From NCBI RefSeq assembly GCF_964204645.1, contig NC_134034.1, positions 13,467,062-13,531,061 of the forward strand: a stretch of 64,000 nt of DNA, given 5' to 3'. Under the pieces are notes generated by a model. The model had not been told where the DNA came from and made no database searches. It saw only the letters and a program-made list of their open reading frames with translations. Shown here piece by piece: positions 380 to 64,000 of this stretch. Position 1 is the stretch's first letter. Every line of letters starts with the position of its first letter. The stretch is from Tubulanus polymorphus (Eukaryota; Animalia; Nemertea). The position numbers were made by a program, and so were the translations under genes.

Positions 380-660
380 TGCTACTGTGGCGAGTGAGGA
401 TCCACCAACCAGTTGCGCTAGTGTGCAGTAGGACATCAAATACTGCGACAATAGAAGATTCCACTTGTGGCAAGTGAGGATCCACCAGGTGTTGCTAGTG
501 TGCAGTAGGACATCAAATACTGCGACAATAGAAGATTCCACTTGTGGCAAGTGAGGATCCACCAGGTGTTGCTAGTGTGCAGTAGGACATCAACTACTGC
601 GACAATAGAGGATTTTCCACTTGTGGCAAGTGAGGATCCACCAGGTGGCACTAGTGGTTA
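380..660. repeat. 77-bp minisatellite (~3.5 copies) with a CTCF-like core
   Basis: Unit gtggcaagtgaggatccaccaggtgttgctagtgtgcagtaggacatcaaatactgcgacaatagaagattccactt starts at 467 and 544. The same family is inverted at 12775-13125. Confidence 0.9.
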
Positions 661-2779
661 CTCAACTGTCCGCGCCTCAATTTATCGCTTCAATTTATCA
701 TAATATTTGGATTCAAGTTGATTATTGAAAATGAATGAATTTTGACTATGTTATTAAACTATAATCGGGAACTATCTGGTGGTATGCGCGCTGGTTCCCC
801 ATTGCATGTTATGTCACAAGATGCTCTCACTGCGCCAGTATGGATAGAGTTTTGCGTCGGTGACGTTGCCAGCAGTGATGAGAAATAATCTTAAGGGGTT
901 CCATTCCTATAACATCAATTGAACTTAATTTTAAACGAACAATTATGCATTAAGAGGGGTTTGTTTTGATTTTCGATTTTCGCTTAAGTGCATCTGCACC
1001 GCAGCGCGATGTATAAATCAGTGATGAACTTTGTTAGTACGCGGTGTATCGATGTAATTAGTAATTCTCTATTGAACGAGGGCACGACCTGTCAAACATA
1101 GTGAAAATTAGTAACTAAGGATACACCGCGCTGCGGTGTAGTTGCACTATAGCTATACTATTTCTTTTGAAATGCTAAAAACAAAAAAGTTGGAGTACTT
1201 GAATAGATTTTCGAATTTTTCTTTGGTTTTTAGTAAAAAAGCAATATTCAGGGTAAATTTAACCTGTTATCAATTCTAAGTATCTTCAATACATGATGTA
1301 TACCTGTCTAGAGACCTTCCAAAAGTATTTGCGGTAATAAAAGACCAACACGTAAATATGCAGTTAAAAAGTAGCGACTAAACCGCAAAAATTTGAGACA
1401 AATTACTTATTTCTTAAAATGGTTCCCATAGAGTGACTTACAGAGACTTAATCTTCCATTAGTTACTATCAATATTATTATCAGTATTATCATTATCACC
1501 TATTATTCCTTACACAGTGTCTTATTGTAAGGCTCTAAGGAGCTTTACAGAATACGTGATAATATATATACAATTAAGTCGCAATGTAGAATAAAATGAG
1601 ATAAAACTATAGTAGTCTTCAGACCTCAGGTAAAATGCCTTCTAAAAAGGTAAAAGCGTTTAATGAACTGTCCAGCTAAACATTCATCGGTAGAGCATCG
1701 AAACAAACAGTCAATAACATAACGCATTACTAATGGAACTTTAATAAAATGTCCAAAACGGTCTGAAAACTGCAAATAAAAAAAAAACCTAAACAAGAGC
1801 ATTGAGCATCTCTTTATGTACGTAAACGATGGGTATTGTATCGATCGGACAAACTCTGCTTTATGAAATTATCGGTTTTCGGCGCGTGTTGATAAGTCCC
1901 GGCATTCGACGGGCCGAGTACGCGGTCCATCGCTAGGCTGACGAGCAGATGTAATTACTCGAAAGTGTTATCGCGTGAGAATGAAGTGCTTTTGTCATTT
2001 TTGGCAGACATTAATTTCTAGACATGTAAATGTGTGATATATGTGCGTTTATTGAATCAGCGTGTTCCATTAATTAAAGCATCAGTTTCTGCAGCTAGAA
2101 TATGTCCTACCCACCTCGGTCTACTGATGGGAGGTGGCAGCCATTCTCAACTTGGCCTTTTCATTTCAGGAAAAAAAAACGAACCGCCTGCTTCCATAAA
2201 CCCCTTGAATCTATGTCATCAACCACTTCAGCTTAAAAATTGATAGAGGTAGCCATCTTTTCTGGAGTGGTCTGAAGGTCAAATCAGTAACAGGCAATTT
2301 GATGACGTCATGATTTATAGAAGCAGGCAGCCATTATTGTAAAGTATATGGTCTATAGATCAATTCATTTGATGATGTCATAGGGGGTTCTCTTCTGGAA
2401 TGGAAGATCCATTTGCTATGTACCCATAGTCCTTACTTGATGATGCCATCATAGTGGAATTTTATGGTGGCGGCCATCTTTTCTTGAAGGGTCTATAGAT
2501 CAATTGACGAGGTAATTTAATGATGTCACAGGGGGAGTTATGGTCGCAGCCATCTTTACAGGAAGGGTCTTTGAGATTTTTTCGAAAATGATTTTTGCTC
2601 GTTTTACCCCCGCGTGTTAAGATATTGAAATGATTTATGATAATGTTTGTGTACTGTGTAGAAACGATGTTCATTGGAAGAACAAGAAAACAGCAACAAC
2701 AATAGCACTGGTTTATTACATCAGGTATTCATCTCTGTATCGCTAATCTATAGGAGAGATGAGACTGAAAACCACGGCT

Positions 2780-7600: not shown

Positions 7601-10600
7601 AGGGATTGTTTAGGGTATTATGTAAGGGTAAGGATGTTTACTGGGTAGATTGATTATCTTACTCTGGTAGGGCGGAGAAGGGTCGGTAGTATATAGGCAA
7701 AAGTAAAGTTGAAGGTAGGTCTATATTTAAGGATTAGGTGGAAACGTTTGTAGGCCGATGCAGCAGGGATATCGCCACAGGTCTCACAGGTTCAATGTTG
7801 GACCGGTATTAAGAAATGTGTATTTCGTAAAGATACATTGAACGTGTGTCATACATTGAACATGTGTCACCGGGGATCAAACCCGGGTCTCGTACATAGA
7901 AAACAAGCGCGTTAACCAGTAGACCAATAGCGGGGATCAAACCCGGGTCTCGTACATGGAAAGCAAGCGCGCTAACCAGTAGACCAATAGCGGGGATCAA
8001 ACCCGGGTCTCGTACATAGAAAACAAGCGTGCTATCCAGTAGACCAATAGAACTAATCCACAAGGTCTAAGGGGAACCGCTGAAGATGAGGGTGTGTGAG
8101 GGAAAGTAAAGGAGCAGTAGTAATCTTGACAAATTTTTTTTTTAATTTCTTGGTTCCCGGGCCGATCCTCAATAAGCATGAGACGCTAGTTTTAACCCTC
8201 GAGCACTCACCGCTGCTAAATATTCACCGTTCAAATCATTAAATATCGGCGTCGAATTCGTATTTTTTCCCTCCTTTGCTCGCCTTCTTGCATTTCGCAA
8301 ATTTTTTCAAAAATTTTAAAAACTTTTCATTTTTTCATAAACCACCCCTCCCCCCAGCCGTACGCGTATTTCAATGCTTTTCCCACTCGTCAAACAACGA
8401 ATATCTAATGCTTTATAATTGAATGATTTATATATAAACTTTCGAACCGAATAAGTTGACTTTATTTCCATCAAAAATTTAGAAGAGATATGTGTGATGA
8501 AAAGCGGATAAGACCAACATTTCAAACAGCGCTAAGATTCATCTACTGATAGAATGAAAATGAAAACGATGAATTTATATGAATTCGTAGTTTGTTTCTG
8601 AATACAAAATCTTTACCGAACAAACTGAAGCATAATGTATTCAGATCAACCGATTATTGACGAAATAGCGAATCAAAACGTCGCGCGGCAGACGGACACT
8701 CACGACAGACGGACACTCGGAACAGACGGACACGCGCGACAGACAGACGGACAATAAAATATGCCACAAAACGACGAACCCGCGCTGCGGGTGTCCATTT
8801 TATCTCGACAGTTTTGCTTCGTAAGCCCCTCGGACCATCGGTCTGGTTGTATTTGGAATAATCGGTTATCAGCGATCGGTTTGTCTCTCGATGTTAATTG
8901 AATGTTATTTATGTAAAAGCGCTGAAATGAATTAACTTTGCCTCCAATTCGCAGTGTTTTTTGTCGCCATCAATTTTTCCTCTTTCATTCTCTCTCTCTA
9001 TATATATATATATATATTTATTCATCATTGTCGTCTTTTCATCGTAATCGTCAATAATTTATATATTTCCAACTCATCTCGTCGTGGTAGAGGACGGTAT
9101 CCGCTCGGTCGGAAAAACAAAAACGTTAAAGGAACGATAACCGCACCCAAACGTGGTGAACAAATAATAAGATAAAAACCCACTATCTACAGATTAAAAA
9201 GATTTAAAAACAAGAATTTATTTATTCAATCTAAAATATATAGAATACACGACGTTTCGATCTCACCCTAGAGATCATCGTCAGGTCCTGACACCTGACG
9301 GTGATCTCTAGGGTGAGATCGAAACGTCGTGTATTCTATATATTTTAATCTGTAGATCGTGGGTTTTATCTTAAAAATGTTAAAAGCTGATCGCGGTGAA
9401 AACTATCTGGGATGAAAATATCGAGTTCCCTGGGTTGTGTATGCACACCCAATATTACCCATATACAGACATGATGATTCACCGATGTAAAAAAAAAAAA
9501 ACAAAGCAACTATGTATACATTTTTCTAGATGATTTCTCTTGTTTCTATTCTCATGTTTTATTTTTTCATTTTTGAAAAGGTCGAAAGGGCAATCGCCAC
9601 TAAGGTATATACATGCACTCACTCTCCGAGACTTACAATGATCCGTAAGAGTCATTACAGAACTTGAGGGGTCGATTCCACAGTTTTGAGTTTAGCCTGA
9701 GAGATAAACTTAAATCTTTTCTTTAATCGAACACATAAAATTGCACTGAAATGGTTTGAATGCTTGAACAAGAAACGATAGTAGTTTTGTACGTAGTTGT
9801 GCTGTTTACAGGCAACTCAAAACAACTTGAGTTCTAGTGAGATCCTTATGCCTAGCCTACATATGTTTCAACTAAATCACATTGGCGCAGGTGGCAGCGC
9901 AACGTCATTCAACTCAATGCAACTCAAGCACTAGCAACATCAATAAGTAGGATAGCTGAAGCCTAGTTACAACGATCACCAAAGGCTCAAACCAACAAAA
10001 GAAAATTTCACTGCCAGTTTAGGTCCTCTGGCCAACTTTCTCAAACAGAACTTTTCTCCTTGATATAGTTCATTTCTTTACATATTAATTTTCTTCGCCT
10101 TTCCATTTGAAGGGGTAAAATAAGTTTTTTGAGAGGTCAAAAGTATCTTGTAGACTTATATAGTTCACGATTCAAAATAGAAGAAATTGCAAAAAAACAT
10201 AGAATATAAACTAGAATATCCTTGAGGGGATTGGTTTGTGCAGCCATTAAGTAGAGAATGATGCACGAGTCAGTTAGTAAACTGGACCCAGTTCCACAGT
10301 TGTGAGTTAGAGTTAACTCTGAGTTAAAGTTAGTTCATTTTCAATGTTTTAACCCAGGGTCAAATCTTAACTCAGAACTGTGGAACTGGACCCTGTAGGT
10401 TAACGATAACCAAAATGATGAATACTATAGTAACAATGGAATATCAATTATCACTTTGTCAACTGAACAACTTGAACATTATCTAGACAACTCTAAAAAA
10501 ACTATCACTGATAAATGAGAAAATGAACAACTCGGAAAAATCGTTCTTTCTTTCTGAAACTTGAACATTAATTATTCTTCGTTTTTAATTGCAGACGACG

Positions 10601-32700: not shown

Positions 32701-33848
32701 CTAACGGTTTAAGACCAAAGTATAACATCCTTTTGGTTCTATAACCAAATCGAAGCACATTTCATTTCTATAGCCAATCTAACAGCATAAGACCAGTTTA
32801 AGCACATTTCATTTCTATAGCCAATCTGACAACTTAAGATCAGTTAAGCTTATTTCAATTCTATAGCCAATCTAACAATTCAAAATGGGTCTCAAAATTT
32901 AAGACCATCGCCTAAAGTGAAACCAGGGGCCGGTTCCATAGTCGCAACTTAAATCCAAAATTGGTCTTAAATCTTAAGACTGGTCTTAAGCTGTTAGATT
33001 AGCTATAGAACTAAGATAGTCTTAGACTTGTCTTAAGTCTAAGCCATGACTATGCAACCGGCCCCAGGGCCTGAAACACTGAAATTTCACATACGTACTT
33101 GGAAGCAGTAGCTAATGTCATCGCGTTACTCTCTAGTATTTTATCACATGAGCACGCCTCTTCAAACCATGCAGTAAACTGTTTTATCGGGTCACGAGAT
33201 ACTAAATCGTTGATGTCGAATTTCTCTTCTTTGTTGTGATACGGCTTTCGCATTCCTGTCGCGTAGAATTATATAAATAATGCATTCCGTTAAGCCTGTT
33301 GTATGGTTAAAGTTGGGTAAAAGTGCAGATCCACACCTCACGTGATTGACGCAATCTGCTGCATGACAGAATCCAGGCTAAAATCTTTCTAGTGAAGATA
33401 TCTTAAATTAACCAGTGGCAATGTAGGTCTACTGAATTACTGAATTTTGAATCTGAAACATTGATATTTAATGTAATTGATTGAACCGTTTACGCGGAGA
33501 GGTGTGGATCTGCACTTTTACCTATAGTTTTTACCTAAAAGTTAAGACCCATCTGAATCAGAAACACCAACCCCTGGGAAATTTAGAGTTACATAACATG
33601 TAAAAAGGAATACCCTATTGTAAAGCAGCAAAGCAACCGGGTAATGGCATGCAATCTAAGGGCCACAGGGGGTCTACAGGTTACTGACACAAATGTTATT
33701 ATCCACTAATTTAATATGGTACCTTACTATTTCTTAACTTACCAGCGACATTGAGCGACATGTTTTCGATTGTGGAAAATCCCCGGCGATAAAAACTACG
33801 AATGACCCAGTTACTCGTAGTAGTCGTTATCTTTCGTAAAAATGTCAT
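29732..33848 (-). CDS. PNPO: Pyridoxine/pyridoxamine 5'-phosphate oxidase
   Basis: Minus-strand exons 33848-33743, 33255-33099, 32177-32078, 31045-30992 (or 31385-31314), 30652-30524, 30118-30048, 29897-29732; all GT-AG and phase consistent. Motifs: [75 protein letters not shown]. Confidence 0.96.
31314..31385 (-). CDS. PNPO: PNPO duplicated exon 4 variant (exon 4a)
   Basis: 72 nt, phase 0-0, tttttgaag acceptor and CAG|gtaaca donor. Encodes [24 protein letters not shown], homologous to exon 30992-31045 ([18 protein letters not shown]). Confidence 0.8.
31465..31960. repeat. 47-bp tandem repeat (~10 copies) in PNPO intron 3
   Basis: Unit ttggttctataaccaatctaacaacttaagaccagtctaagctcatt. Confidence 0.9.
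32927..33064. mobile_element. PIF/Harbinger-type MITE
   Basis: gggccggttccatagtc ... gactatgcaaccggccc with a CAG TSD. Confidence 0.85.
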
Positions 33849-50366: not shown

Positions 50367-51467
50367 ATGCAGAATACCACCAGCGCAGTCGTTGAGTTGA
50401 CTGCTTGCGAGCAATGGAAAAAGAAACCTATCAGATGGGATTTTAAGTTCAGCGTATTGGCATACATCTATTTCGTTGGACCGGCGACGATTTTCAGTAT
50501 AATATTCAACAGCTTTACCTTCGTAATTTTGAACACAATGAAAAGTCGTTCTTATTACTTAGTCAAAGCGGTAGCGGTCAATGATGTTCTGTACTCGTTG
50601 TCTGTATTCGTCATGTACCCGCTTAGGACTATTCATGTTTACCGACTTCTGGGAGATATTGTTTTTCGTGTGGATGACTGGCATTTTGGAAGGGCATTTG
50701 TTAAAGTTTCTCACGGATGTTATTACATATTCTTGCTCACTCGCAACTGGTGTGTTTTCTTGTTGAGTTTTGAGAAGTGTGTAATTGTGTTGTTTCCTTT
50801 GAAATCACGTCTGTTTTGGAATAGAAAAGTTGTAAATTCTCTGTTAGTTATCATACACCTCGGTTCAGTAGCCATGTACTTTCCTCAACTCGTCCCCAGA
50901 TCTCCTTTCTTTTTTACAAAACCATGCGGTGAATCAGGACCGACAATAAGTATGAACAAAAAAGTCAAACTATGGCATTTTCCAGAATTGCTCTCAGTGT
51001 TTCTGAAATGGAACAAAGCGATATTGAAATGGCCGGAATTCATATTCGGGGTTTAGATTCCGATGACATTCCTGTTTATAACAAACACAGCCTTAATCGT
51101 GATTCTCCTTTTTAAACGCACGTCACGCGGTAAGATGCTGCAGTCTGCGCAAAAAACCGAAATCAAAACGGAATCGAGTTCGATAGAGACACGAGTGATG
51201 AGAATGGTTGTAACAGTTGTGTCTGTTTATATCGCATGCGAGTCAGTGTTTCTTATTGACCGACTCGTATCAGCGGGTTACATAAACCTGAAGGGCAGAT
51301 ACAAATACGGAATGGTCGTCCGGAAAACGGGTATCGGACTGACTGTGGTCGATTCGTGCGCTAACTTTCTTATCTATAGCATTACAAACCCAAATTTCAG
51401 ACAAGCTGGCACGAAACTATTACAGAGCTTTGTCAATCGCCTGAAGCCCCGCGCCCGCTGTCGATAG
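50367..51467 (+). pseudogene. Intronless orphan rhodopsin-class GPCR interrupted by one in-frame TAG (51054-51056)
   Basis: ORFs 50367-51056 and 51063-51467 are in the same frame (EFIFGV*IPMTFLFITN, within TM5). TM2 VAVND, TM3 EKCVIVLFPL, TM6 VYIACE, TM7 DSCANFLIY..NPNFR are intact on both sides. Confidence 0.8.
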
Positions 51468-53049
51468 ATTCCAGCGATTAGATTTAGTTTGAATATTTAG
51501 TTTGTAGTCTCGCTGTCTGTAGAATCTTTATGAAGGTTATCCCCATTTCAAGACTGCAAAATGTCGTGTAATTATGAAATTTTGCACAGCTCTGATTAAG
51601 TGGTATATACTGCTGTGGGGTACATCAATTCGCGGGACATTTCCAATCAAAACACAACAACATCATTCCCAACATAAACTAAGAATTGCTTTTTGTATAA
51701 TACATTTCCAATGGACGGGCAGTGTTCTTAGTAAAGTGTCATGTAAGCATATATTATATATTATCCGACAGAGATCTGTGGATGAAACTATATATAATTA
51801 TTCACCTTGGTAACGCGAAGTTTCAGATATCGTTGGTATTAATTACGTGTAACGCAGCATGATGTCTGAAATATCATAAATATAGGCTGCCGAATACAGA
51901 CTTTGAGATTCAAGTATCGATTTAAATCCCACGATAATCGGTCCATGGTTTATATGTATGGAAAAGTTGCGTAAAATCTGAAATATAAACTACAATAGTT
52001 TCGCCCGTTTCCCTTATTCAAAAGAATTTGCACCAGCTGACCTCTACCGTCCATTATTGAGAGGCTACCTCCTGACGAATTGCACCGATTTGTACCCATG
52101 AACATTTTTCTTTGTTTCAAAATATTCTCACAACATATCTGCCATTCGCTCACATACCAATATTGAATTTGATTATGTTAAGTAAGTTACGTATTCACAC
52201 CAAAAAAGGAGTTCATGATAAAGAAATGTTAAAGTGACAATCAAAATATAGCTGGGGCAATTTAATAATTATTATTTGGTCAAGAAACTGCTCCTCGATT
52301 GAAATCGGTATTTTTCGATAGGAAAGCATCAACGTTTGATTGTTGCTAAAAACTTCATGAAACGGTTGAAAGGTTTTAACGTGAATCATATTTATTTTTA
52401 TACAACAATTATAGAAAATGCCAGATTAAGTGCTTGAGGAATTAAAATGTAAGTTCCTTAAACACGACGACTGTATATTAAAAAAGACCAATCATAATGG
52501 ACGTATAAACTAGGACAATTTACTAATGTTCATATATACTCATTTATCAAAAAAACTGCAACTCTTTTTTCCGATAGGACCTTTATCACATCGCATACTG
52601 AAAACTACAACTGCGAAAAAGTTGCTATAAACTAAACTATTAACAATTGAAGAGTAATAACATGATGATGAAGATGTATGTTGTTTTATTATTATGACAA
52701 CTATTATTTATCATATAAGTTCCTCATGAACAAACACGTGAACTGTATTACAAAAACAGTTCAACATAAGATGCATTAAACTAGAGATAAAACCTAGAAT
52801 ACACTCTGAAAAGACTAAGATTAACAAATCAATCTATAATTTCATTTTCATTGACTTTATTTTCAATCATTGTAGGCTGATATGGATAACAGTTTATATG
52901 TAATTATTATCACAAATCATTCAAAGCTATATATGCTCAACTAAGTATGAAAATTATCTGAACTTAAGTTCACAATGTTGATATTATATCTCAGTAAAGG
53001 TGCAACTCAACCGACCTATGAGTCAAAACTAGCTGGAGTCTTCGGTGGT

Positions 53050-54521
53050 CACTTCTGGATGGTAGGATCTAGATGACTAATGTATCTCATGCTGGGCCTT
53101 TCCAGATTCATCTTTAGCTGGAATAAGAAAAAGAATGATTTTCTGTAGTCACACAATTCTTTGATTAATTGTAATTGACATGTGTATCAACTTAACTTTC
53201 TTAAGATTGCCGAGCATCCCTTTTTCATCATCGTATGGTGTCATCTTCTTAATCATGGTGGGCCTGTTCAGATTAAGTTTACCTGAAATGAGTTTAAGAA
53301 CGACATTCGGTAGTTACACAATTCTTTCATAAATTGTAATTGTCATGTGTATCAACTTAACTTTCTCAAGATTGCCGAGTTCAGTATCGTCTTGTTGTAG
53401 CATCCTTTCATCGTTATCTTCTGTCATCTTGGGGCGTCGTCGTCTTCTGGGGGAGTCCTGAAATGAAAAAAGGAACAGAGATGAAAACCTGGTACGGAAC
53501 AAAACTAATGTCCGAAAGTGTCGGCTCCCGGCACAAGTCATGTGCAGAGGATACCAGAAAAAGAGTCAGCCAGGAATTTACTGCCCTCAACACACCCTCA
53601 CACAAAACGCGAAAACCTGAATGTCAACGCCTCACGTTCACCATCTAACCACAGGGTGTACTGGGTGATGTTAGTAACTGACACACCTGTAAGTTTGTTC
53701 AAGACAAAAATAGCGCAGTACAACCAGATTGCCCGAATTGAGATTCAGGATCTCAACTAGCACTCAAAGGCGTGACAAGAGACTTCATCCCTGCCCGAGG
53801 TAGTCACAAGGACTCAATGAAACTAGCACTCACAAGCCGACAAGAGACTTCATCTCTGCCCGAGGTTGTCACAAGGACACAATGAAAACTAGCACTCAAA
53901 CTAGAAATCAAAGGGCGAGACAGTAGAATCATCCCTCATCCGAGTGGTCACAAGGACCAATGAATACTAGTGGCGTGACAGTCCAGTTTAACCACTCCAT
54001 TTTCACCGCGAACATCCTACAGATTTGCCCGTCATTAACGTCGCCAAGCACACTCTGCAGTTAGATAATGAACGTGAAGCAGTTGTCTTCCTGGTTTTCG
54101 TGTTCCGTATGAGGGCGTGTAGAGGGCAGCATTTCCTGACAGACTCTTTTTCTGACATCCTCTGCACATGACCGGCGAAGGGGCCGACGCTTTCGGACAT
54201 GTGTTTTGTTCCATAGAACGTTGAAAATCGATAGAGAAATCGGCCCTGAAAAAAAAGAAGGAATTAGACGCTGGAAAATATAACGGATTAATAAACACAG
54301 AACAGTAACACATAAAACATAAAGACGTCGTTCCTCACAAGGGAGGAACCAGCTTGTAGAGCGCAGCGTCATCGCGAGGATGATCGCCGGGATGAACGCC
54401 ATATTCGAAATCCTGTCAGCACAGTGTGAAGATCAAGAGATGAATGACTGGCCTAGTGATTCTACTCACCGTCGACCGGTGGCGTATTTCAATACTGACC
54501 AATAGGCAGTCGCGCTGTTGT
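53050..54521 (-). ncRNA. Putative spliced minus-strand transcript without a consistent long ORF (lncRNA or decayed gene)
   Basis: Pyrimidine-rich AG acceptors on the minus strand give exons starting at 54521, 54412, 54245, 53457, 53282 and 53117, with donors after 54470 (gtgagt), 54339 (gtgagg), 53362 and 53197 (gttaag). Reading frames do not join into one protein. Confidence 0.4.
53493..54215 (-). repeat. Long imperfect inverted repeat (arms 53493-53700 and 54010-54215) around three ~65-nt tandem units
   Basis: The reverse complement of 54010-54215 aligns end to end with 53493-53700 (shared blocks such as ggaacaaaac, atgtccgaaag, gtcatgtgcagaggat, cagaaaaagagtc, tcacgttca), roughly 75% identical by eye. 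Confidence 0.9.
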
Positions 54522-55613
54522 CTGTTGAAAGGGTTTACATTGAAGTTTGTCCACCGTTCCGCTGTTACACCCACCGGGCGATCGTGACGTCACCTCTGTA
54601 ATACATCCAGCATATAGACCAGGCACACGGGTACCATTGAATATTGATCTATAGAAATATCTCTGAACAGTTCGAATTGTCGAAGTTACCGCATGATAAA
54701 ACACTGACGCGACGTCACCTTTATACACCCGGCATATAGAATAAACTTGATAGAAAAATAATAGCAAACAATTTGAATCCCCACTGCTCCTATACTGCGA
54801 TGATGCTGATCGTTTACAGACCCTTGGTTGCAACGAAGTTTGTTAATCCTTTACCGACGGTTATACTACGTAATAAAATACAAAGAACATCAACCAACTT
54901 AATTATATAAAATGAACGTAAATTTCCTCAAATGGTGAACGCAGTTGGTAGACTACTGAAGAGGCTGACCTACTTTCTAAATGAAGTATAACGCCCCGCT
55001 GAGATGGAATGTTATACTGTATTCTGGAATCCGTCGATACTTTTAAACGAATACCTCAAACATCATTTTGGGAAAGCTTTTTAACATTAATTGAATTATC
55101 GATTGATTGATTCAATTATTTCTAGCAAAATATCAGATAACCATCTAATTCATTATCGACTGATTCGTTCTATGGACACAAACAAACAAGTCTAGTTCAT
55201 GAATTCTTGCCCTATGAGACCTAATTTGATACTATGTGACTTCCAAAAGTAGGGTAAATTGTAAATTTTGATACAAATATACAGCTTTGAATCGTTAAGG
55301 CCATAGCCCCAGACTAATGGCAAGTGGATAATAGAAATGAGTTTACAGGGTTAGGTTTTTTTTTTTGGGGGGGGGGGGTAGTTAAGCTTTAGAGTACCAT
55401 AGTTTAAAAGGTTAGGGTTCAGAGGGTTAGAATCGCCAATTCATTGCTATTTTTATCCTTTTGCGCCGATCGTTGCGATCGCATGATACGCGCGATACAA
55501 TCGTGATATTCAACCAGAATCGCGAATTCTTTAGAATCGCATGCTATCCTTTTGCGACTCGATCGTAGCGATCGTAATGCCAGAGGCTAGTGGTCAACCG
55601 TTAATGATATATT

Positions 55614-55967
55614 CAGGGGCGGATCCAGGGGGATGGGTAGACAATATTGGAAGAAAATTTAAGGGCACCTTTCTGATCTTAGGGCACACCCAGTACCCAG
55701 GTCAATGCGAGTGCTGAAGGTGCGACGTCCTTCGAAGGGGGTATGGGGGCCCTCCCCTGAAAATTTTGAAAATATGGTACCATTTAAAGGCTTTTAGAGG
55801 GCTTCTAGAGACTAATTCAGCGCAATCCAGAATAAACGACCCGGACACGGAATTAGCGGTTGCTGAAATAATGCCGTCAAAAATATTGCCGGTGAAATTT
55901 CGAAGGGCACTTAAAAATTCTAGACCGTATTGGGCAATACGGCTAATACGGTCTGGATCCGCCTCTG
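55614..55967. mobile_element. MITE with caggggcggatccag TIRs
   Basis: caggggcggatccag ... ctggatccgcctctg flanked by atatt on both sides. Confidence 0.7.
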
Positions 55968-56311
55968 ATATTCAATTCATATAATCGTAGAATAGCGTTT
56001 TGAAATCATATGAATCACAAATTGATATATTATTTCCTTAAACTATGAATAGAATCGAAAAGATCGCAAATACTGTGTGATTGTGCTATTCAGAAATACC
56101 GCACCGTTCTCCAAGTTTATTCGACTAAGAACAAAAACTAGATTCGGTGCAAGAATACTCGTATAGATTCGGTGCAATCCAGCTATTCGGAGCAAACCTT
56201 GCTAAGCACCGAGTGACCACGCTATTCGTGATATAACCCTTACTTCACTTCCTGGTTTCTGTCAAAAATAGCAAATATTTTGGTTAATATTTCGTCCTTA
56301 GTTTTTTAAAT

Positions 56312-59300
56312 ATGCAAGAGAAGATGTTGTCATCTCTATTGAAACAACATCAACAAAAACAACAAGCCAGAAAAGACTCTCAGGGTAAAGAACAACCACA
56401 AGAGACTAATCGATTAGTATCAGGAAATACTCCTTCCGTCACAGAGTGGTGAACAACTGGTACTCGCTCACGGAAGATATAGTGAATGCTCCATCTACAA
56501 ATGCTTTCAAATTACGTCTCGATAAACACTGGCAAGAAAAGCATTTCCTACTACGGGTCGAGCACTACTAACTTGGACCTGAATGTTATCGGAATTCACG
56601 GATGTTGTTATGTTTTCCGCTATTACCAAAGTGCTGGCAATACCTGGCAACTTAAGCGAAACACCGAGGCAGTCAAATTTATAGGCCAATAGGCCTTCTT
56701 CAATGACTGCGAAAACGATACGATACGATACGATAGTATTGAGTTGTATCTTTGCTATCCGTCCTGACTTTGTTGACACCCACCGAAAAACCGCTTACAA
56801 TAAATAATGTTTATTTATATACATTGATATCTATAGTATACGTTATTTAAGGGGTTCTGTGTGAGTCGATATTAAGCACTACGTCATCAATATTGGCGTT
56901 TCAAAATAATTACAATTGTGAATTTTGGTGTTCGTTTAAATAGATATAGGCCTATATCGATGATCAGCCGGGCCTATATCAGGGCTCCTCTGATTGCCGG
57001 TCGTGTTGTTTTCAAGGCGTCGATGAATTTTAAAGTTTGTTTCCGTGTTCATTTTTCAGAGAAAAAGAAGAAAGAAGTGACGACTGCTGTAACTAAACTG
57101 ACACACGCTCTAGTTGACCATCTGAACGCTGGGTAAGAACTAAACCAGTGCTTCTAGCCTGATATCAGTCAATATAGAAAATAAAATATGGGTCCAAGAG
57201 AAGAAAAGGTTAGAAGATTAGGACAGGACAGGCGTAGGATAGATAAATCTGCTGAGATGAAGGTCACGGTCCAGTTTCACAAAATCTTATTGCATAGATT
57301 GAATTTCTTCATTATTTCAGTTTATCTTAAACCTTTCAATGCTGACTAATTGATACCCAAAATTGCTGGAGATAATTCGAAAATTTTGAATTTTAAAAAT
57401 GCACTGAATAGTGGGCATACCGCTGTAAGTGCGTTAACACCACGGTGCGATGTATCGTTAGGCTACTAGTAAAGTCTGTCACCGGTTTATACACCGCACT
57501 GATGGGTGGACGCGCTGAAAATGTTAAATCAATTCACGAGTTAATCATGTTTTGTGAAACGACCTCGGTTATAAGCGGGGATGACAACGGTAGGCTACCG
57601 GTACGTCACATTACAAGCCGGTATAATGTTAATTGTTTCAGCGTTGCGCAGGCTTACGTGAATCAGAAAAAGTTAGACACTGAAACGAAGATCTTGCAAG
57701 CAAATGCCGCCCAGTTCGCTAAACAGACAACACTCTGGTTGAGACTTGTCGAGGACTTCAATACAGCCTTGAAGGTTTGTTAGTTGAATGTCTAATATCT
57801 GGTGTTTGTAGTCCATTTCCAATTAAAGATATCTCAGGTGAAATACTGAACACATGTGGACGATCAGTTATTGAAATGTGCCGATGAAATGTCTAATATC
57901 TTGTGTTATTGGGATGAAAGTATGTACTCAATTTGATTTATTTGTTTTTCTCAGGAAATAGGCGATGTTGAGAACTGGTCTCGCAGCATGGAAACCGACA
58001 TGAGAACGATATCCAGTGCTTTAGAATACGCTTATAAAGGTATTTACAAAAACTCTGCATGACGTTTCTTTCTTCTCATTTCATCCCACCGCGATATTCA
58101 ATGGTCTTTAAAAGTTATCTAATGAATTAACTATGAATTCCTGCTCCTGGCTCTCCCTCTCCCCTCTCCCTCACCCTCTCCCATTGCCTCTCCCTCTCCC
58201 ATTGCCTCTCCCTCACCCTCTCCCTCTCCCATTGCCTCTCCCTCTCCCATTGCCTCTCCCTCTCCCTCCCCTCTCCCTCTCCCCTCTCCCTCACCCTCTC
58301 CCTCACCCTCTCCCTCTCCCATTGCCTCTCCCTCTACCATTGCCTCTCCCTCTCCCTCCCCTCTCCCTCTCCCTCTCCCTCTCTCCCTCTCTCCTGTTTA
58401 GTTCTATAGTTAGTTCGAATAAATATACTTTTCAAAGTCCTAGAATTCCTAGATACGCTGTCAAGAGTTAAGATAAGACCGGGGCCTTATTGAACGCTTG
58501 CAACCAAATATGATTAAAAGTAGAACTAAAATGAGTTTAAACTGGTTTCAAGTAGTGAGATTGATTATAGACCTGAAATGAGCTTGGACTGGTCTTAAGT
58601 TGTTAGTTTGGTTATGGAACCAAAGTAAGCTTAGACTGGTCTTTAGTTGTCAGATTGGCTATAAAACCAAAATGAGCTCAGACCGGTCTTAATAAGTAAG
58701 CCTTGACTATGCAGCTGGTCCTTGTTCTTTGAACCTTCAACCTTTAAGTAGAGTAGAAATATATTATAACCGGAAAGCTGTATATTTTTCTTCCGCTGTC
58801 GATTAAAGCTGAAAGAAAGTGGTACGTCTATGATCTTACAATACGTGTAGTTAGTTTCATTGTTGATTGTTGCTTTGTCTTGTTCATCTACAACTTAATT
58901 TGCTGACAACTGGTGGTACTTGGATACCAGTTGTGTGTCATTATAATCACAAGTAGTCCCATATTAAAATCATATTTCTCAATATTATTTAGTTACTTAC
59001 ATCACTAATGCCAGCCGGGTACGCACCAATTTAGATGCATGATTTTTAAATAAATGTCATGAATATCTGCACTCAATTCAGATCTGTTCGATTTGCTTTT
59101 TGTTCGATCTTGATTTGGTTTTGTTCTGAACTTAGTATTAGACCGTCCAACTCTACTATCAAATTTTGTCCGAAGAAATCCGACTTGAGCAGAGTCTTCT
59201 GTACCATCCAACTCAGATGTCATTCTCAAGTCAAAAGAGGTGACTTGAGCGGAGTCTACTGTATCATCCAACTCAGATATCACTCTCAAGTCAAACGGTC

Positions 59301-59669
59301 TTACTTGAGTGGAGTCTACTGTACCATCCAACTCAGATATCACTCTCAAGTCAAAGATCAGACTTGAGCGGAGTCTACTGTATCATCCAACTCAGATATC
59401 ACTCTCAAGTCAAAGATCAGACTTGAGCGGAGTCTACTGTATCATCCAACTCAGATATCACTCTCAAGTCAAAGATCAGACTTGAGCGGAGTCTACTGTA
59501 TCATCCAACTCAGATATCACTCTCAAGTCAAAGATCAGACTTGAGCGGAGTCTACTGTATCATCCAACTCAGATATTGCTGCTTTTATTCGCGAGGGGTT
59601 TAGTTTGTAAAAGAATTCTGTATTTAAAATACATGTGATGCGTGGTTATTTTTTGCAGGAGAGCAATGA
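56312..59669 (+). CDS. BLOC1S1: Biogenesis of lysosome-related organelles complex 1 subunit 1 (BLOS1/GCN5L1)
   Basis: Exons 56312 (or 56324)-56384, 57060-57132, 57642-57774, 57955-58039, 59659-59669 (an unspliced alternative end stops at 58062). Gives [73 protein letters not shown]. Confidence 0.95.
56388..56735 (+). mobile_element. 5'-truncated CR1/L2-clade LINE 3' end in BLOC1S1 intron 1
   Basis: Translates to [38 protein letters not shown], the typical C-terminus of CR1-group ORF2, followed by a short 3' UTR and a (CGATA)4 tail. Confidence 0.85.
58145..58395. repeat. (CCTCTC)n-type polypyrimidine tract
   Basis: About 250 bp of cctctc/ccattg/cctcac hexamers. Confidence 0.95.
59180..59576. 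repeat. 59-bp tandem repeat (~6.5 copies)
   Basis: Unit gacttgagcggagtctactgtatcatccaactcagatatcactctcaagtcaaagatca. Confidence 0.95.
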
Positions 59670-59832
59670 GCTACAAACTACCCTATCACCCGCGAGATTT
59701 ACCAACTGATTTAGGTCATCGAAATCTAGCTGCCGCGACTACAGAAGACAGCCCCGCCTCAAACGGTGACAAACACAAATAATCAATTGTTGTAATGATT
59801 TTATATATCATGTAAATATTTTGTAAAAACTT

Positions 59833-59980
59833 GGGACCCAATTCCGCAGTTGTGGATGATGCAGGGACCCAATTCCGCAGTTGTGGATGATGCAGGGACC
59901 CAATTCCGCAGTTGTGGATAATGCAGGGACCCAATTCCGCAGTTGTGGATGATGCAGGGACCCAATTCCGCAGTTGTGAA
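59833..59980. repeat. 31-bp tandem repeat (~4.7 copies)
   Basis: Unit gggacccaattccgcagttgtggatgatgca. Confidence 0.95.
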
Positions 59981-62900
59981 TGAAATCTATGAACGTCACA
60001 TCTTACAGAAACTGCATCGAGAATCAATTAACTGATTTCTAGTCTAAATGCTATTGTAATTATTTGTAAATATAATAGATATCTAATTTATTTAATTCCT
60101 GTCAGTCTTGATGAAGATGTTTCTTTTTGAAAACCAGGTAGAAGTTGTTAATATATATATGTAGTTCATTTTCGTGTAAAATAGCTCTGGTGAAGCCTTG
60201 AACACATGACAAAAAGTGCCACAATATATGAACATACAAGACATTAAGCGATTCCACAAAAATCCATCAGAATATAACGATGCTTTTTCATATCTTAAAA
60301 AGTTTTTTTTTTATTTTCCATGAAAAAAATCAGGATTTTATACAAGCCAGAGATGCATTGGAATGTTACTAATACAGAAAGATAGACAGATAATAATAAT
60401 CATAATAATAAGAGGAATGGGGGAAAAAACGTTAAATAAAATTTCATCTAGTCGAAGGTCGACTTGAACAATCGAAAAATATTTACAAAACCTGAAAAAA
60501 AAATTATTACACAAATTGTTTACATCGATTACATTTACTCAATGGATATAACATCTATAAATAACGTATCCCGACTCCTGCCAGGCGTCTGTGCGAGGGC
60601 CATCCTCCCTAAACAGTAGTCGCAGGGATGAAATAATCTTGTGGACACATCCTTCCTCAGCAGAGATTTGAACTTGATACCTCATCTTTGAGGGCAGGGA
60701 GTGCCATCAGCTGGTTCAAATCCTTACGAGGAAGTAACGTGGCTGGTCTCGCAATGCGTTCAAATCCCTGCGAGGGAGGATGTGGTCGCCATACCACTCC
60801 TGGCAATCGAACACATCACCGCTGGATCCCCAATCGGGATTGAGTTTGAGATTACTTCGGAAGATTTTTTCTAACAATCGCATCTCGCCCTTAAAGTTCG
60901 CACACGGAATGATGGAATGAATTTAAACCTGTACGGTACCTGAGAGAAGCAGAGTGTGATTGGACCATTGATTATATTCAATATCTACCGTACAAGGGTT
61001 TACTTTTCAGGAATGACACATGTACCGAGTCCCTGGACTCAGATCAGCCCCGATGTCTTAGTCCGGTGGTGTGATAAGCGGACCAGTGCGCACATCTCAT
61101 TAGAGTGAATGCTAGGTCCGTTATAAATTGGAATGGACTAAATTTAGAACGCTCGAGATAAGTTCGTGAGTACGTGGCTATAAATGCAGATTACGATGAT
61201 TGTTTTTTAAGGGATGATTTGAAGATCGAAACTCGTTTTATTAAGATATGACGCTAGAAATTAACAGACCGCGTCTCGTGTGTACTTAAAATCAGAATAC
61301 TGAAATCGTACAAGTTTCCGGTCCGGACTACTGACAAAAATCGATTATAAACTTATATCGTTGGTCCCGAATGGTCACCGAATTAATACGATCCCTGCCG
61401 ACTACGAGATATCTCTTAAGTCCAGTTCCACCATCATTGCCACAACAAATTATCTCGTAGCTGCTTCATCTTGTTCCCTGTTTGATATTTGCACTCCGGC
61501 ACACGGGAATGAGTCAATGACACGGTTCCTGATTGGCTGGCAACGTGAACAAACTCGACTTAATTCTCAATGCTCATTGGTCAATTTCGAGCAAAAACAG
61601 ACTTCATCGTCAGCCTACGAGCATATTCATCGTGGCAATCGGGGGCAGCACCGTATTAGCCGGCAGCGAACGAGTTAAGCCGGTTTTACTTTACATCTAT
61701 AAGACACATATATACTAAAATACCGTAAATTCCTAACAGAAATTTTGCAACAATTGTTCTTATATTTTTTACTGTGGTCCCCATTATTAGTATTATTAAT
61801 GTTGAAAGATACACTGACACACTCATATATCTATATATATATATATATATATTTATATACATATATATTGTAATGCCTATATAGTGTACACCCTATATGG
61901 CGTACACTATATCGGCCTATCATACGTACTACTAACTTATTGCATTGTTGCACGTTTTTTTTTTTCATTTCATTTTTACAGATGTTCTTATTACTGTTTC
62001 GAGAACCTCGTCGAACGAAGTCGACTTTAATACCGCTGCTGGTTTAATATTCGTTCGTAATTCTCCGTCGAAATGAACGAGAATTGTATCGATATAATTT
62101 CCGTATTAAATACATTTTAAAACCGTAAATACGAGGACTGTATGAGAATTATACATCTATAATCTTGTATTAATACAAGTTGTACGGGAATGTACATCTC
62201 GTATTGATGATATTAATACAGCTTGTACATGTATGATCAATTTAATACACCTTGTATGATCTGATGAAAATAGCTTGTATTAATACAGCCTGAACAGTGT
62301 ATTGATATAGCACGTGCAGTGTATTAATACATGTGTACTTTGTATGATCTACATGAATAGAGCTTGTTCAATATATTGACACTGCTTGTACGAACGATTA
62401 ATACATCTCGTATTAATACAGCTGTATGAAGTAGTAATACATCTCGTATTAATTCCGCAATACAGGAATACACACAATATATGTATATTAGCACATTCTT
62501 AATGAAACTATACACAGTCGGCTAAATCTAATATATTTACAGTTATAGTTCGTTTTTAACTAGTACAAAGAACGTGAAATTTTTTCTAGATCGGTTTCAT
62601 TCAATATCGGGATCTATTTCTTTCTGGCCTTGAACAAAGGTCGCGGTAACAACCACCGCCAGAAGGAGCATCGACTGCTTAATTCAAAGAATGTTGTATT
62701 ATTTATTATTATTACGAAACAGTTAATACGACTATACATTGTATTAAACACTTCACGATAGCCACTTAAAGCTTAGATAGGTCTTCACAGTACACCGAGC
62801 TCACAATTTAGCAACAAAGGCGCCACCTATACAATCATAAACCGCATATGTATACATATATTTTGAACACTATACTAGTACAAGTTTGTTTCAGTTGCTG

Positions 62901-63279
62901 CCTTGTATTTGGAATTTTCATTATGCGTCGCTCAAGAGATACTTTTGAATGTATTACATGTAGTTTCAATAGAAACCTTTGGTCGATTATTTGTACGCGC
63001 TAAAGCCAGCAGCAGGGGTCAGTTACGTAGGCCAGGGAGGCGCTTACTGATGGAGGAGTGTATCTGGTTCTTAAGTAGAGTACATTCCAACCACAAACAT
63101 GGAGCTGGATGATCCACGGGTAAAATCAAACTCACACTGCTATAGCCACAATCAAACGGAGACATAGAGTGTCTAACTCGCCGGGGACTAAACCCATGTC
63201 AACTTTAGCTCCTGCCTGCTCTGACTTAGCCCTGTCATCAAAAGCTCATAGTGATTGTGACTTATATTGTTAGGTGCAG

Positions 63280-63417
63280 GGGCCAGTTGCACAGTTGTGA
63301 CTTAAGTCCAAAAGTGGTCTTAAATCTTGAGACTGGTCTTAAGTTGTTCGACTGGCTATAGAACTAAGTTGGTCTTAGACTGGTCTTAAGTCTAAGCCAT
63401 GACTATGCAACTGGCCC
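63280..63417. mobile_element. PIF/Harbinger-type MITE
   Basis: gggccagttgcacagt ... actatgcaactggccc; same family as 32927-33064. Confidence 0.8.
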
Positions 63418-64000
63418 CGATGCCTCCCTGTGTCCACTATCTCTAACGAAGGTTCGATTGTTTCGATGTGAAACTGACTCCGGTTTACTGATCATTCAGC
63501 AACTTCAGTTTACAAACGATAAGTCGATATTTCACATGACAAAAACGCCCTACAAAAAACGTGGACAAGGAAATCGTCTTCGGGCCCAGAAAAGTTTTCT
63601 CGCCTTCAGAAAATAATCATTGATTCCATCATTTTTACTGCCGTGAAAAAACGACATAGAAACTAAATCTAATTTTCCAGATTCCATTTACTAGATTCTA
63701 CAGCGCCCAGAAAAAGGTGCATAAAGCGTACGAAGCGTATTGAGCTAAAACGATACAAATCCGGCGCGTGCGCCGCGTGTGAAAATAAGACGGATTTAAA
63801 TGAATCACAGCGAAAAAATAAGATACTACAGAAATAATTACTCGAATCGAGAAATCAGCTCTTTTTCGAGAACATGCAAATGAAAACCTAAGAAAGATCT
63901 AACAGGCTAAACAATCAATATTATTTCTTCTTGATTATTATTATTATGAATGCAGATTATATGCAAATTAGTGATGAAAAAGGATGCTTATTGGTCGTCC

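What the first reader, a model, noticed from the sequence alone, without database searches (positions are those of the whole stretch)
53493..54215. Long hairpin with strand-biased G-U-compatible divergence: candidate hpRNA (endo-siRNA) or ADAR-substrate locus
Seen: ~210-nt arms about 75% identical. By hand I count about 20 transition differences that give G-U pairs in the minus-strand RNA, versus about 7 that would do so on the plus strand (these become A-C mismatches on the minus strand). Neutral decay of a DNA foldback should give a symmetric split. The favoured strand is the one carrying a series of splice signals, and the stem runs from just after one acceptor (54246) to just before the next (53458). 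Known: Drosophila hairpin RNAs are spliced transcripts with long G-U-rich stems that are diced into siRNAs, and A-C mismatches in long dsRNA are preferred ADAR sites. Inference: a structurally selected dsRNA gene in a lineage where such loci are not well described.
Basis: partly seen in the sequence, partly recalled or inferred. Interest (0 to 1): 0.8.

Follow-up and report, generated by a model that had tools for sequence, protein, structure and literature searches.

The report
Wobble-rich hairpin module of dispersed repeat
The long hairpin and its one-strand G-U bias are real, but this is one slowly decaying copy of a hairpin module found at least 178 times in this ribbon-worm genome, so the bias was inherited from the repeat family and does not mark a hairpin-RNA gene at this locus.

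Summary
Observation confirmed. Arms 53486-53700 and 54010-54222 give 212 aligned pairs, 78% Watson-Crick. There are 21 transitions that are G-U on the minus-strand RNA and 6 on the plus strand. Predicted fold energy is -396 (minus) versus -321 kcal/mol (plus).

Interpretation partly supported. The hairpin is not a unique gene. A 37-mer from its arm occurs 178 times, on both strands, and similarity between copies continues beyond both arms, so the hairpin is not a MITE either. It sits inside a repeat unit that is 2.8 kb here and about 6 kb elsewhere, with no recognisable coding sequence.

All 68 full-length copies examined show the same bias; the family majority state has 33 G-U and 9 A-C pairs. 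Changes private to one copy are symmetric (38 versus 33). Changes shared by three or more copies favour G-U (37 versus 14), and 22 pairs show paired double changes against 0-5 in shifted controls. Flanking sequence shows no strand-biased mutation.

So pairing on one strand was probably selected in the lineages that spread the repeat. The window copy is now decaying.

I could not get RNA data, so transcription, splicing, dicing and editing remain untested. Earlier follow-ups of this scan reached the same reading for other copies (s1-492787, s1-503523).

The parts
53962..54212 (-). 5' arm of the hairpin, read on the minus (G-U-favoured) strand
   Evidence: Family register of 254 pairs mapped onto the window copy.
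53497..53767 (-). 3' arm of the hairpin
   Evidence: Together with the 5' arm: 186 WC, 33 G-U, 8 A-C and 21 other pairs.
53755..53960 (-). Central region of about 66-bp tandem units (three to four). The window copy lacks a 47-column stretch of this centre that most copies have.
   Evidence: the repeat finder families D2-D4. The gap in columns 291-347 of alignment A1 is shared with L009.
54223..54360 (-).
   Evidence: In the 68-copy alignment most columns are at least 97% identical. Sequence read.
53459..53485 (-).
   Evidence: Nearly invariant in the aligned copies.
53031..53458 (-). Tandem units of about 165 bp, each with an exon-like piece. Copy number varies between family members.
   Evidence: Direct repeat D1, 102 nt, 85% identity, spacing 165. 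Two to four units in other copies. In the window copy the donor-like site is GTTAAG, a weak match.
52298..55170 (-). The whole repeat unit as kept in the window (about 2.8 kb). It is collinear with units of about 5.4-6.4 kb elsewhere. The window copy lacks 1.6-2 kb between 53024 and 53031, and it lacks the family's 3' terminal segment.
   Evidence: BLAST of the window against six 19-kb loci and 30 flanked loci.

Best explanation
The 737-bp foldback is one old, slowly decaying copy of an internal hairpin module. The module belongs to a dispersed repeat family with at least 178 copies, units of about 6 kb, and no recognisable protein-coding sequence.

Shown: the imperfect arms and the excess of G-U over A-C pairs on one strand were already present in the family's ancestors and are carried by every copy examined. 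Variation between subfamilies keeps pairing on that strand, through G-C/G-U and A-U/G-U swaps and paired double changes. Changes private to single copies break pairs without any strand preference.

Inferred: a single-stranded form of the module, most likely the RNA of the strand that reads as minus in this window, had to stay folded in the lineages that gave rise to new copies. G-U wobbles let the RNA stay paired while the two DNA arms drift to about 78% identity. That drift would make the DNA less of a perfect palindrome.

What the folded RNA does is not shown. My best guess is a structural element of the repeat's own transcript. For example, it could loop out about 740 nt between the two conserved pyrimidine-CAG motifs, or serve as a processing or stability element. 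When transcribed it would also be a Dicer or ADAR substrate as a by-product. At this locus there is no sign of a function beyond family membership.
For: - **Copy number and context.** The full hairpin query found at least 35 full-length matches at 79-86% identity among 40 scored of 172 candidates. A 37-mer of the arm found 86 forward and 92 reverse hits against 0 in the control. Similarity between copies continues through both hairpin ends and over 2.8-6.4 kb.
- **The bias is inherited.** All 30 copies, then all 68, have more G-U than A-C pairs on the same element strand, whichever genomic strand they lie on. The majority state is 198 WC, 33 G-U, 9 A-C and 14 other, binomial p=0.0003.
- **Selection signature.** Singleton variants give WC-to-GU 38 versus WC-to-AC 33 (p=0.64). 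Variants shared by three or more copies give 37 versus 14 (p=0.0018). Pair-keeping versus pair-breaking counts are 50:33 for shared variants and 49:98 for singletons, Fisher p=1e-4.
- **Covariation.** 22 pairs carry shared double changes that keep pairing, against 0-5 in registers slid by 1-3 columns. RNAalifold found 18 such pairs among 30 copies.
- **Pairing by strand.** 89.5% of cells are canonical on the favoured strand and 80.5% on the other.
- **No mutational asymmetry.** Transition rates in the 280-nt flanks, oriented to the same strand and taken on internal branches, predict a GU:AC ratio of about 1.06. This figure is my own arithmetic from the counts.
- **The window copy is decaying.** It has 10 private substitutions, and 6 of them break pairs.
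- **Engineered precedent.** Hairpin-RNA transgenes with 18-21.5% G-U pairs keep the RNA paired while disrupting the DNA inverted repeat, and they still trigger RNAi (PMC9263138).
Against: - No RNA evidence of any kind. Two of the three runs offered behave like DNA, and the one guessed to be RNA holds nothing. Transcription of the favoured strand, splicing and small RNAs are therefore all unshown.
- G-T is also the most stable mismatch in DNA, so a single-stranded DNA hairpin would leave the same signature.
- Double changes in an inverted repeat can also come from DNA-level conversion between the arms, and 20 of the 22 count equally on the other strand.
- The polarity of shared variants was taken against the majority state and a midpoint-rooted tree, not against an outgroup.
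- Copies are mosaic between subfamilies, which inflates parsimony counts.
- The shared-versus-singleton contrast for GU:AC alone is only p=0.04.
- The repeat's class and mode of spread were not determined.
- The donor-like sites are weak or not conserved.
Confidence: 0.62

Rival explanations
1. The selected form is single-stranded DNA, not RNA. The repeat spreads or replicates through a strand-specific ssDNA intermediate (rolling-circle or Helitron-like, or hairpin-primed). The module must fold in that strand, and G-T wobbles are tolerated there while A-C mismatches are not.
For: - The unit has no LTRs and no terminal inverted repeats.
- It has a sharp common 3' boundary, at the same position in 13 of about 40 scored matches, and no poly(A) or simple-repeat tail in the three ends read.
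- It has no reverse-transcriptase or transposase ORF of its own.
- Unchecked first-reader notes report strand-specific G-T wobbles in foldback termini of Polinton-like DNA elements of the same genome. This is a lead only.
- All the selection statistics fit ssDNA as well as RNA.
Against: - No Helitron-type termini (5' TC, 3' CTRR after a hairpin) were recognisable at the 3' end.
- The hairpin lies about 4 kb inside the unit rather than at an end.
- The favoured strand is also the one carrying the conserved pyrimidine-CAG motifs, which suggests an RNA reading.
- No Rep/helicase partner element was sought or found.
Confidence: 0.15
2. There was no selection. This is an ordinary old foldback whose master copies accumulated strand-asymmetric transitions: deamination of the non-template strand during germline transcription, or RNA or cDNA editing during retroposition. 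That produced a G-U excess, which every daughter copy then inherited.
For: - In the hairpin centre, internal branches give C-to-U 27 versus G-to-A 9. In the upstream flank the counts are 46 versus 20. This hints at some C-to-U excess on the favoured strand.
- Most G-U/WC polymorphisms are C/U opposite G, about 16 against about 6 G/A opposite U (my tally from the pair table). That is the type deamination would make.
Against: - The downstream flank shows the opposite trend (C-to-U 52, G-to-A 60).
- The pooled flank rates predict GU:AC of about 1.06, against 37:14 among shared variants and 33:9 in the standing state.
- A-to-G is not elevated in the stems (0.38 per site versus U-to-C 0.35), so ADAR hypermutation of an RNA intermediate is not the driver.
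- A mutational bias does not explain 22 covarying pairs against 0-5 in slid controls.
- Nor does it explain the excess of pair-keeping changes over transversion mismatches among shared variants compared with singletons.
Confidence: 0.15
3. One reading: this particular locus is a host hairpin-RNA (endo-siRNA) gene or a dedicated ADAR substrate, maintained by selection here.
For: The minus-strand RNA would contain uninterrupted helices of 32, 26 and 19 bp, long enough for Dicer and for promiscuous ADAR editing. The fold is very stable.
Against: - At least 178 copies with the same structure and bias.
- The window copy's nearest relative is 93.6% identical, and most of its private changes break pairs.
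- It carries internal deletions and lacks the unit's 3' end.
- Every scored match of the hairpin in the genome was another family copy, so no separate target gene appeared.
- No RNA evidence.
Confidence: 0.03

Closest known systems
Drosophila hairpin-RNA (hpRNA) endo-siRNA loci
   Same: Both are long inverted repeats whose transcript would fold into a stem of several hundred base pairs. The stem here is long enough to be diced (helices up to 32 bp).
   Different: hpRNA loci are single or tandem host loci whose arms derive from, and target, a specific gene (PMC10317233 and PMC10292708, known to me from their abstracts as listed). Here the hairpin is a module of a repeat dispersed at least 178 times. 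No separate target was seen, and no small RNAs could be examined.
Foldback and MITE transposons (terminal inverted repeat elements that fold into hairpins)
   Same: Both are multi-copy, dispersed, have long imperfect inverted arms with tandem subrepeats between them, and are potential sources of hairpin siRNAs.
   Different: The arms here are not the ends of the mobile unit. Similarity between copies runs on for hundreds to thousands of bases on both sides and there is no TSD at the arm ends. The whole unit has no terminal inverted repeats.
Engineered G:U hairpin-RNA transgenes (Nat Commun 2022, PMC9263138)
   Same: In both, wobble pairs on one strand keep the RNA fully paired while the two DNA arms are no longer a perfect inverted repeat. 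The G-U share is comparable: 13% of cells here against 18-21.5% in the constructs.
   Different: Those are designed constructs in plants, where the benefit is escape from inverted-repeat DNA methylation. Here the pattern arose naturally in an animal repeat family, and its benefit is only inferred.
Large non-coding non-autonomous retroelement derivatives with a conserved RNA structure (LARD-type elements of cereals). Recalled from my own knowledge, not checked here.
   Same: Both are multi-kb, non-coding, multi-copy units in which a conserved RNA secondary structure, rather than a protein, appears to be what is preserved.
   Different: LARDs have long terminal repeats. This unit has none, and its mode of spread is unknown.

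Membership tests
hpRNA / endo-siRNA locus | Transcript folds into a long, near-perfect dsRNA stem | tested here: met
   Predicted only: -396 kcal/mol, z -17.9, with uninterrupted helices of 32, 26 and 19 bp on the minus strand.
hpRNA / endo-siRNA locus | The hairpin strand is transcribed | not testable with these tools
   No RNA run holds the stretch. Two runs behave as DNA, and the one guessed to be RNA holds nothing. No predicted protein or transcript ORF was found in the large collection.
hpRNA / endo-siRNA locus | 21-23-nt small RNAs arise from both arms (Dicer products) | not testable with these tools
   No small-RNA library was available.
hpRNA / endo-siRNA locus | Discrete host locus whose arms are complementary to a separate target gene | tested here: not met
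   At least 178 dispersed copies. Every scored genomic match of the hairpin is another family copy. Only 40 of 172 candidates were scored, so a short target match cannot be excluded.
Foldback / MITE transposon | The inverted repeats are the termini of the mobile unit | tested here: not met
   The alignment of 30 copies with 120-bp flanks stays conserved beyond both arm ends. Similarity extends over 2.8-6.4 kb.
Foldback / MITE transposon | Target-site duplications flank the arms | tested here: not met
   The flanks of the arms are family sequence, not target DNA.
Foldback / MITE transposon | Many dispersed copies | tested here: met
   86 forward and 92 reverse hits of a 37-mer, on contigs C1-C12 and C55.
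ADAR substrate / edited dsRNA | A-to-G differences between RNA and DNA in the stem | not testable with these tools
   No RNA reads.
ADAR substrate / edited dsRNA | If editing fed back into new copies: an excess of A-to-G over U-to-C in the stems on the favoured strand | tested here: not met
   Internal branches in the arms give A-to-G 43 (0.38 per site) and U-to-C 48 (0.35 per site). G-U/WC polymorphisms are mostly C/U opposite G.
LTR or TIR transposon (the whole unit) | Long terminal direct or inverted repeats bound the unit | tested here: not met
   Self-comparison of three 19-kb loci shows only internal tandem repeats and the hairpin.
Non-LTR retroposon or Helitron-like element (the whole unit) | Defined 3' end shared by copies | tested here: met
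   13 of about 40 scored matches end at the same query position, 298. Three ends were aligned.
Non-LTR retroposon or Helitron-like element (the whole unit) | Poly(A) or simple-repeat tail, or a CTRR end after a hairpin; TSDs or A/T insertion site | tested here: inconclusive
   No tail and no clear CTRR in three ends.

The most novel reading that the evidence does not exclude
The repeat family is a self-propagating, non-coding 'hairpin gene'. Its conserved, G-U-buffered stem of about 250 bp is a dedicated substrate of the worm's Dicer or ADAR machinery. It would serve either as the repeat's own brake or decoy, or as a host-tamed siRNA source. That would give Nemertea (and Spiralia) a class of dispersed, structurally selected long-hairpin RNA loci not described there.
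Probability: 0.2. Interest if true: 0.7.

Novelty: new variant of a known kind. Interest (0 to 1): 0.38.

Why it matters
For this locus the result is deflationary. A striking strand-biased hairpin is explained by descent from a repeat family, and it should not be annotated as a host hairpin-RNA gene.

For the family the result is more interesting. A non-coding repeat with at least 178 copies has kept about 250 base pairs of one-strand pairing through wobble and compensatory changes. That pattern means a folded single-stranded nucleic acid mattered for its spread.

If that molecule is RNA, it offers a natural counterpart of the engineered G:U hairpin design. It would also be a concrete entry point to endogenous dsRNA biology (Dicer, ADAR) in ribbon worms. 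In my literature searches I found no work on hairpin or dsRNA loci in ribbon worms.

It is also a caution for genome scans. A G-U/A-C asymmetry in a foldback has to be tested at the family level before it is read as selection at a locus.

Tried and rejected
- **RNA evidence.** The look-up of sequencing runs returned two runs of unknown kind, which cover introns, flanks and repeats alike as DNA would, and one run guessed to be RNA that holds nothing. Both caps are used, so expression, strand, splicing and editing are untested.
- **Rfam, 51500-56000, permissive threshold.** Only two chance-level hits, neither in the hairpin.
- **Pfam on the four ORFs that overlap the hairpin and its upstream flank.** Nothing.
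- **Protein Atlas on the 114-aa upstream ORF.** Low recognition and no family.
- **Large protein search with the 113-aa ORF that runs into the 5' arm.** This was also a possible back door to transcript-derived ORFs. No hit.
- **Ordinary MITE or foldback.** Rejected because the flanks are conserved.
- **LTR or TIR element.** Rejected.
- **Local transcription-coupled mutation at this locus.** Rejected because every copy carries the bias in either genomic orientation.
- **ADAR hypermutation of an RNA intermediate.** Rejected because there is no A-to-G excess.
- **Variable 5' truncation as a retroposition hallmark.** The upstream end points cluster at a few positions, so they look like subfamily mosaics rather than random truncation. 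Not accepted as evidence.
- **The count of structure pairs.** Not used, because it needed an 811-character structure string typed in. Equivalent slid-register and opposite-strand controls were scripted instead.

Full report
**1. The observation**

Reading 53300-54400 and the repeat finder show four collinear inverted-repeat blocks. These merge into one imperfect foldback.

A local alignment of the left arm with the reverse complement of the right arm pairs 53486-53700 with 54010-54222. It gives 212 pairs, of which 166 are Watson-Crick (78%). Of the transition mismatches, 21 are A-C on the plus strand, which means G-U in a minus-strand RNA. Six are G-T on the plus strand. The two-sided binomial p is 0.006.

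The minus-strand RNA of 53450-54250 folds at -396.4 kcal/mol and the plus strand at -321.1. Uninterrupted helices reach 32, 26 and 19 bp on the minus strand, against 18 bp at most on the plus strand. The centre (53755-53960) consists of tandem units of about 66 bp.

**2. It is not a single locus**

Searching the window's own genome (268 Mb, 77 contigs) with the 737-bp foldback returned at least 35 further full-length matches at 79-86% identity. They lie on many contigs, and only 40 of 172 candidates were scored.

A 37-nt piece of the arm, allowing three mismatches, occurs 86 times forward and 92 times reverse. The reversed control pattern occurs 0 times, and 59 hits are exact.

When 30 copies are aligned with 120-bp flanks, similarity does not stop at the arm ends. 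So there is no target-site duplication at the hairpin, and the hairpin is not a MITE or foldback transposon in its own right.

BLAST of the window against these loci and against six 19-kb loci shows a repeat unit of about 2.8 kb in the window (about 52298-55170). It is collinear with units of 5.4-6.4 kb elsewhere. The window copy lacks 1.6-2 kb between 53024 and 53031, lacks a 47-column stretch of the hairpin centre, and lacks the family's 3' terminal segment.

**3. What the unit is**

- No ORF of 100 aa or more within the units resembles a transposon protein.
- The ORFs overlapping the hairpin region have no Pfam match.
- The 114-aa upstream ORF is not protein-like to the Atlas.
- The 113-aa ORF has no relative in the large protein collection.
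- Rfam finds nothing.
- Self-comparison shows no LTRs and no terminal inverted repeats, only internal tandem arrays (about 165 bp and about 66 bp) and the hairpin.
- On the favoured strand the unit has a sharp common 3' boundary: 13 of about 40 scored matches end at the same position, out of 239 candidates. There is no A-rich or simple-repeat tail in the three ends read.
- Upstream end points cluster at a few positions, which looks like a subfamily mosaic rather than random truncation.

I could not assign a transposon class. The exon-like pieces in the 165-bp units have conserved acceptor-like motifs, but the donor-like sites are weak (GTTAAG). A candidate GTGAGG donor upstream of the hairpin in the window copy is absent from the family majority.

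**4. The G-U bias belongs to the family**

In pairwise arm alignments, all 30 copies show about 29 G-U-compatible against about 9 A-C-type transitions on the same element strand, whichever genomic strand they lie on.

I then aligned 68 full-length copies. I defined the pairing register from a strand-neutral DNA alignment of the two arms, so that A-C columns were not dropped. The majority state is 198 WC, 33 G-U, 9 A-C and 14 other, out of 254 pairs. Every one of the 68 copies has more G-U than A-C. The binomial p for 33 of 42 is 0.0003. The window copy has 186 WC, 33 G-U, 8 A-C and 21 other.

The asymmetry therefore says nothing about selection or transcription at this locus.

**5. Is the family-level bias selection or mutation?**

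Three tests bear on this.

*(a) Age classes.*

| Variant class | WC to G-U | WC to A-C | WC to other mismatch | Double change keeping WC |
|---|---|---|---|---|
| Seen in one copy only (mostly after insertion) | 38 | 33 | 65 | 11 |
| Shared by three or more copies (arose in lineages that kept spreading) | 37 | 14 | 19 | 13 |

The singleton split (38 versus 33) gives p=0.64. That symmetry is what neutral decay under strand-symmetric mutation predicts. The shared split (37 versus 14) gives p=0.0018. Pair-keeping against pair-breaking changes are 50:33 for shared variants and 49:98 for singletons, odds ratio 3.0, p=1e-4. Counting polymorphic pairs without assuming a direction, WC/G-U alternations number 56 and WC/A-C alternations 22.

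*(b) Covariation.* 22 pairs carry shared changes on both sides that keep pairing, against 0-5 when the 3' partners are slid by one to three columns. RNAalifold on 30 copies found 18. Examples are A-U 15 / G-C 9 / G-U 6 at one pair and C-G 21 / A-U 8 at another. On the favoured strand 89.5% of cells are canonical pairs; on the other strand 80.5% are.

*(c) Mutation spectrum outside the stems.* I oriented the 280-nt flanks to the favoured strand and took internal branches of the tree. The upstream flank shows C-to-U above G-to-A, and the downstream flank shows the reverse. Pooled per-site rates are about 0.80, 0.82, 0.59 and 0.49 for C-to-U, G-to-A, A-to-G and U-to-C. These predict a G-U:A-C creation ratio of about 1.06 (my arithmetic). 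That is far from 37:14 or 33:9. A-to-G is not elevated in the stems, and most G-U/WC polymorphisms are C/U opposite G, so heritable ADAR editing of an RNA intermediate is not the cause.

Caveats:
- Polarity rests on majority states and a midpoint-rooted FastTree.
- The copies are mosaics.
- Double changes can also come from arm-to-arm DNA conversion, and 20 of the 22 count equally on the other strand.
- G-T is tolerated in DNA hairpins too.

**6. Most likely mechanism**

- *Shown:* the hairpin is an inherited module, it has conserved pairing biased to one strand, and it decays neutrally after insertion. The window copy fits this, with 10 private substitutions of which 6 break pairs.
- *Inferred:* a single-stranded form of the favoured strand had to fold in the source lineages. 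I rate RNA as more likely than ssDNA, because the same strand carries the highly conserved pyrimidine-CAG motifs that flank the stem base at about 25 nt and about 28 nt. The 130 nt upstream of the hairpin are the best conserved part examined.
- Wobble pairs allow the RNA to remain about 90% paired while the DNA arms are only about 78% complementary. Engineered G:U hairpin transgenes exploit exactly this property and still trigger RNAi (PMC9263138).
- Whether the natural hairpin serves splicing or processing of the repeat's transcript, its stability, its spread, or small-RNA production is not shown.

**7. Comparison with known kinds**

It works like a hairpin-RNA locus only in its predicted structure. 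It fails the tests of being a discrete locus and of having a separate target. The RNA features cannot be tested here.

It resembles foldback and MITE elements in copy number and arm structure, but it fails the defining feature that the arms are the termini.

It is best described as a structured internal module of a non-coding dispersed repeat. That is a variant of known repeat-borne inverted repeats, unusual for the evidence of one-strand structural constraint.

**8. Earlier notes of this scan**

These notes name the organism as the ribbon worm Tubulanus polymorphus. They report follow-ups on other copies (s1-492787, s1-503523) with the same conclusion: hundreds of copies and a one-strand G-U bias kept by selection. 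One of them also states that the repeat appears to be transcribed and spliced.

I reached the copy-number and selection conclusions independently on a different copy set. The claim of transcription and splicing I could not check. The organism's name is taken from those notes and was not verified here.

Other unchecked notes report strand-specific G-T wobbles in foldback termini of Polinton-like elements in this genome. That keeps the ssDNA rival alive.

**9. Verdict**

The reading as a hairpin-RNA or ADAR gene at this locus is not supported, but structural selection at the level of the repeat family is supported. The locus itself is ordinary, a decaying repeat copy. The family is moderately interesting and needs RNA data.

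Noticed in passing
window 54223-54360 (minus strand) and the same stretch in 68 copies: The roughly 130 nt just upstream of the hairpin are the most conserved part of the repeat examined. Most columns are at least 97% identical, more conserved than the arms. The stretch ends in two tandem T-rich-CAG motifs. This could be a processing or promoter-proximal signal of the repeat.
   Followed up: partly
window 53031-53460: Tandem units of about 165 bp, each with an exon-like piece on the minus strand. The number of units differs between family copies, from two to four.
   Followed up: partly
window 50367-51467 (+): Two adjacent ORFs (229 aa and 134 aa) have hydrophobic, seven-transmembrane-receptor-like sequence and are separated by a single stop. 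This looks like an intronless receptor gene with a lesion.
   Followed up: no
window 58133-58471 (+): A long CT/CC-rich simple repeat that translates as (PL)n, with strong local GC skew (-0.19 over 58001-60000).
   Followed up: no
window 59005-59367 and 59716-60027: Two tandem-repeat arrays, with repeated peptide motifs visible in the ORF translations on both strands. They are unrelated to the hairpin family.
   Followed up: no
window 594-683, 9132-9306, 33355-33522, 63277-63418: Short stretches that match the flanks of other loci fetched for the hairpin family (81-89% identity). These are copies of other dispersed repeats of this genome.
   Followed up: no
same genome, other contigs (earlier notes s1-496616, s1-526870, s1-513948, s1-513980, s1-487556): Unchecked first-reader notes report strand-specific G-T wobbles in foldback termini of Polinton-like elements. 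If real, one-strand wobble bias in foldbacks may be a wider feature of mobile DNA in this genome. That would favour an ssDNA reading.
   Followed up: no
L049, L077 and about 10 further loci (for example L043, L046, L054): Several family copies match only the first roughly 270 nt of the hairpin before diverging, or have a different centre. So at least one more subfamily or rearranged form of the module exists.
   Followed up: no
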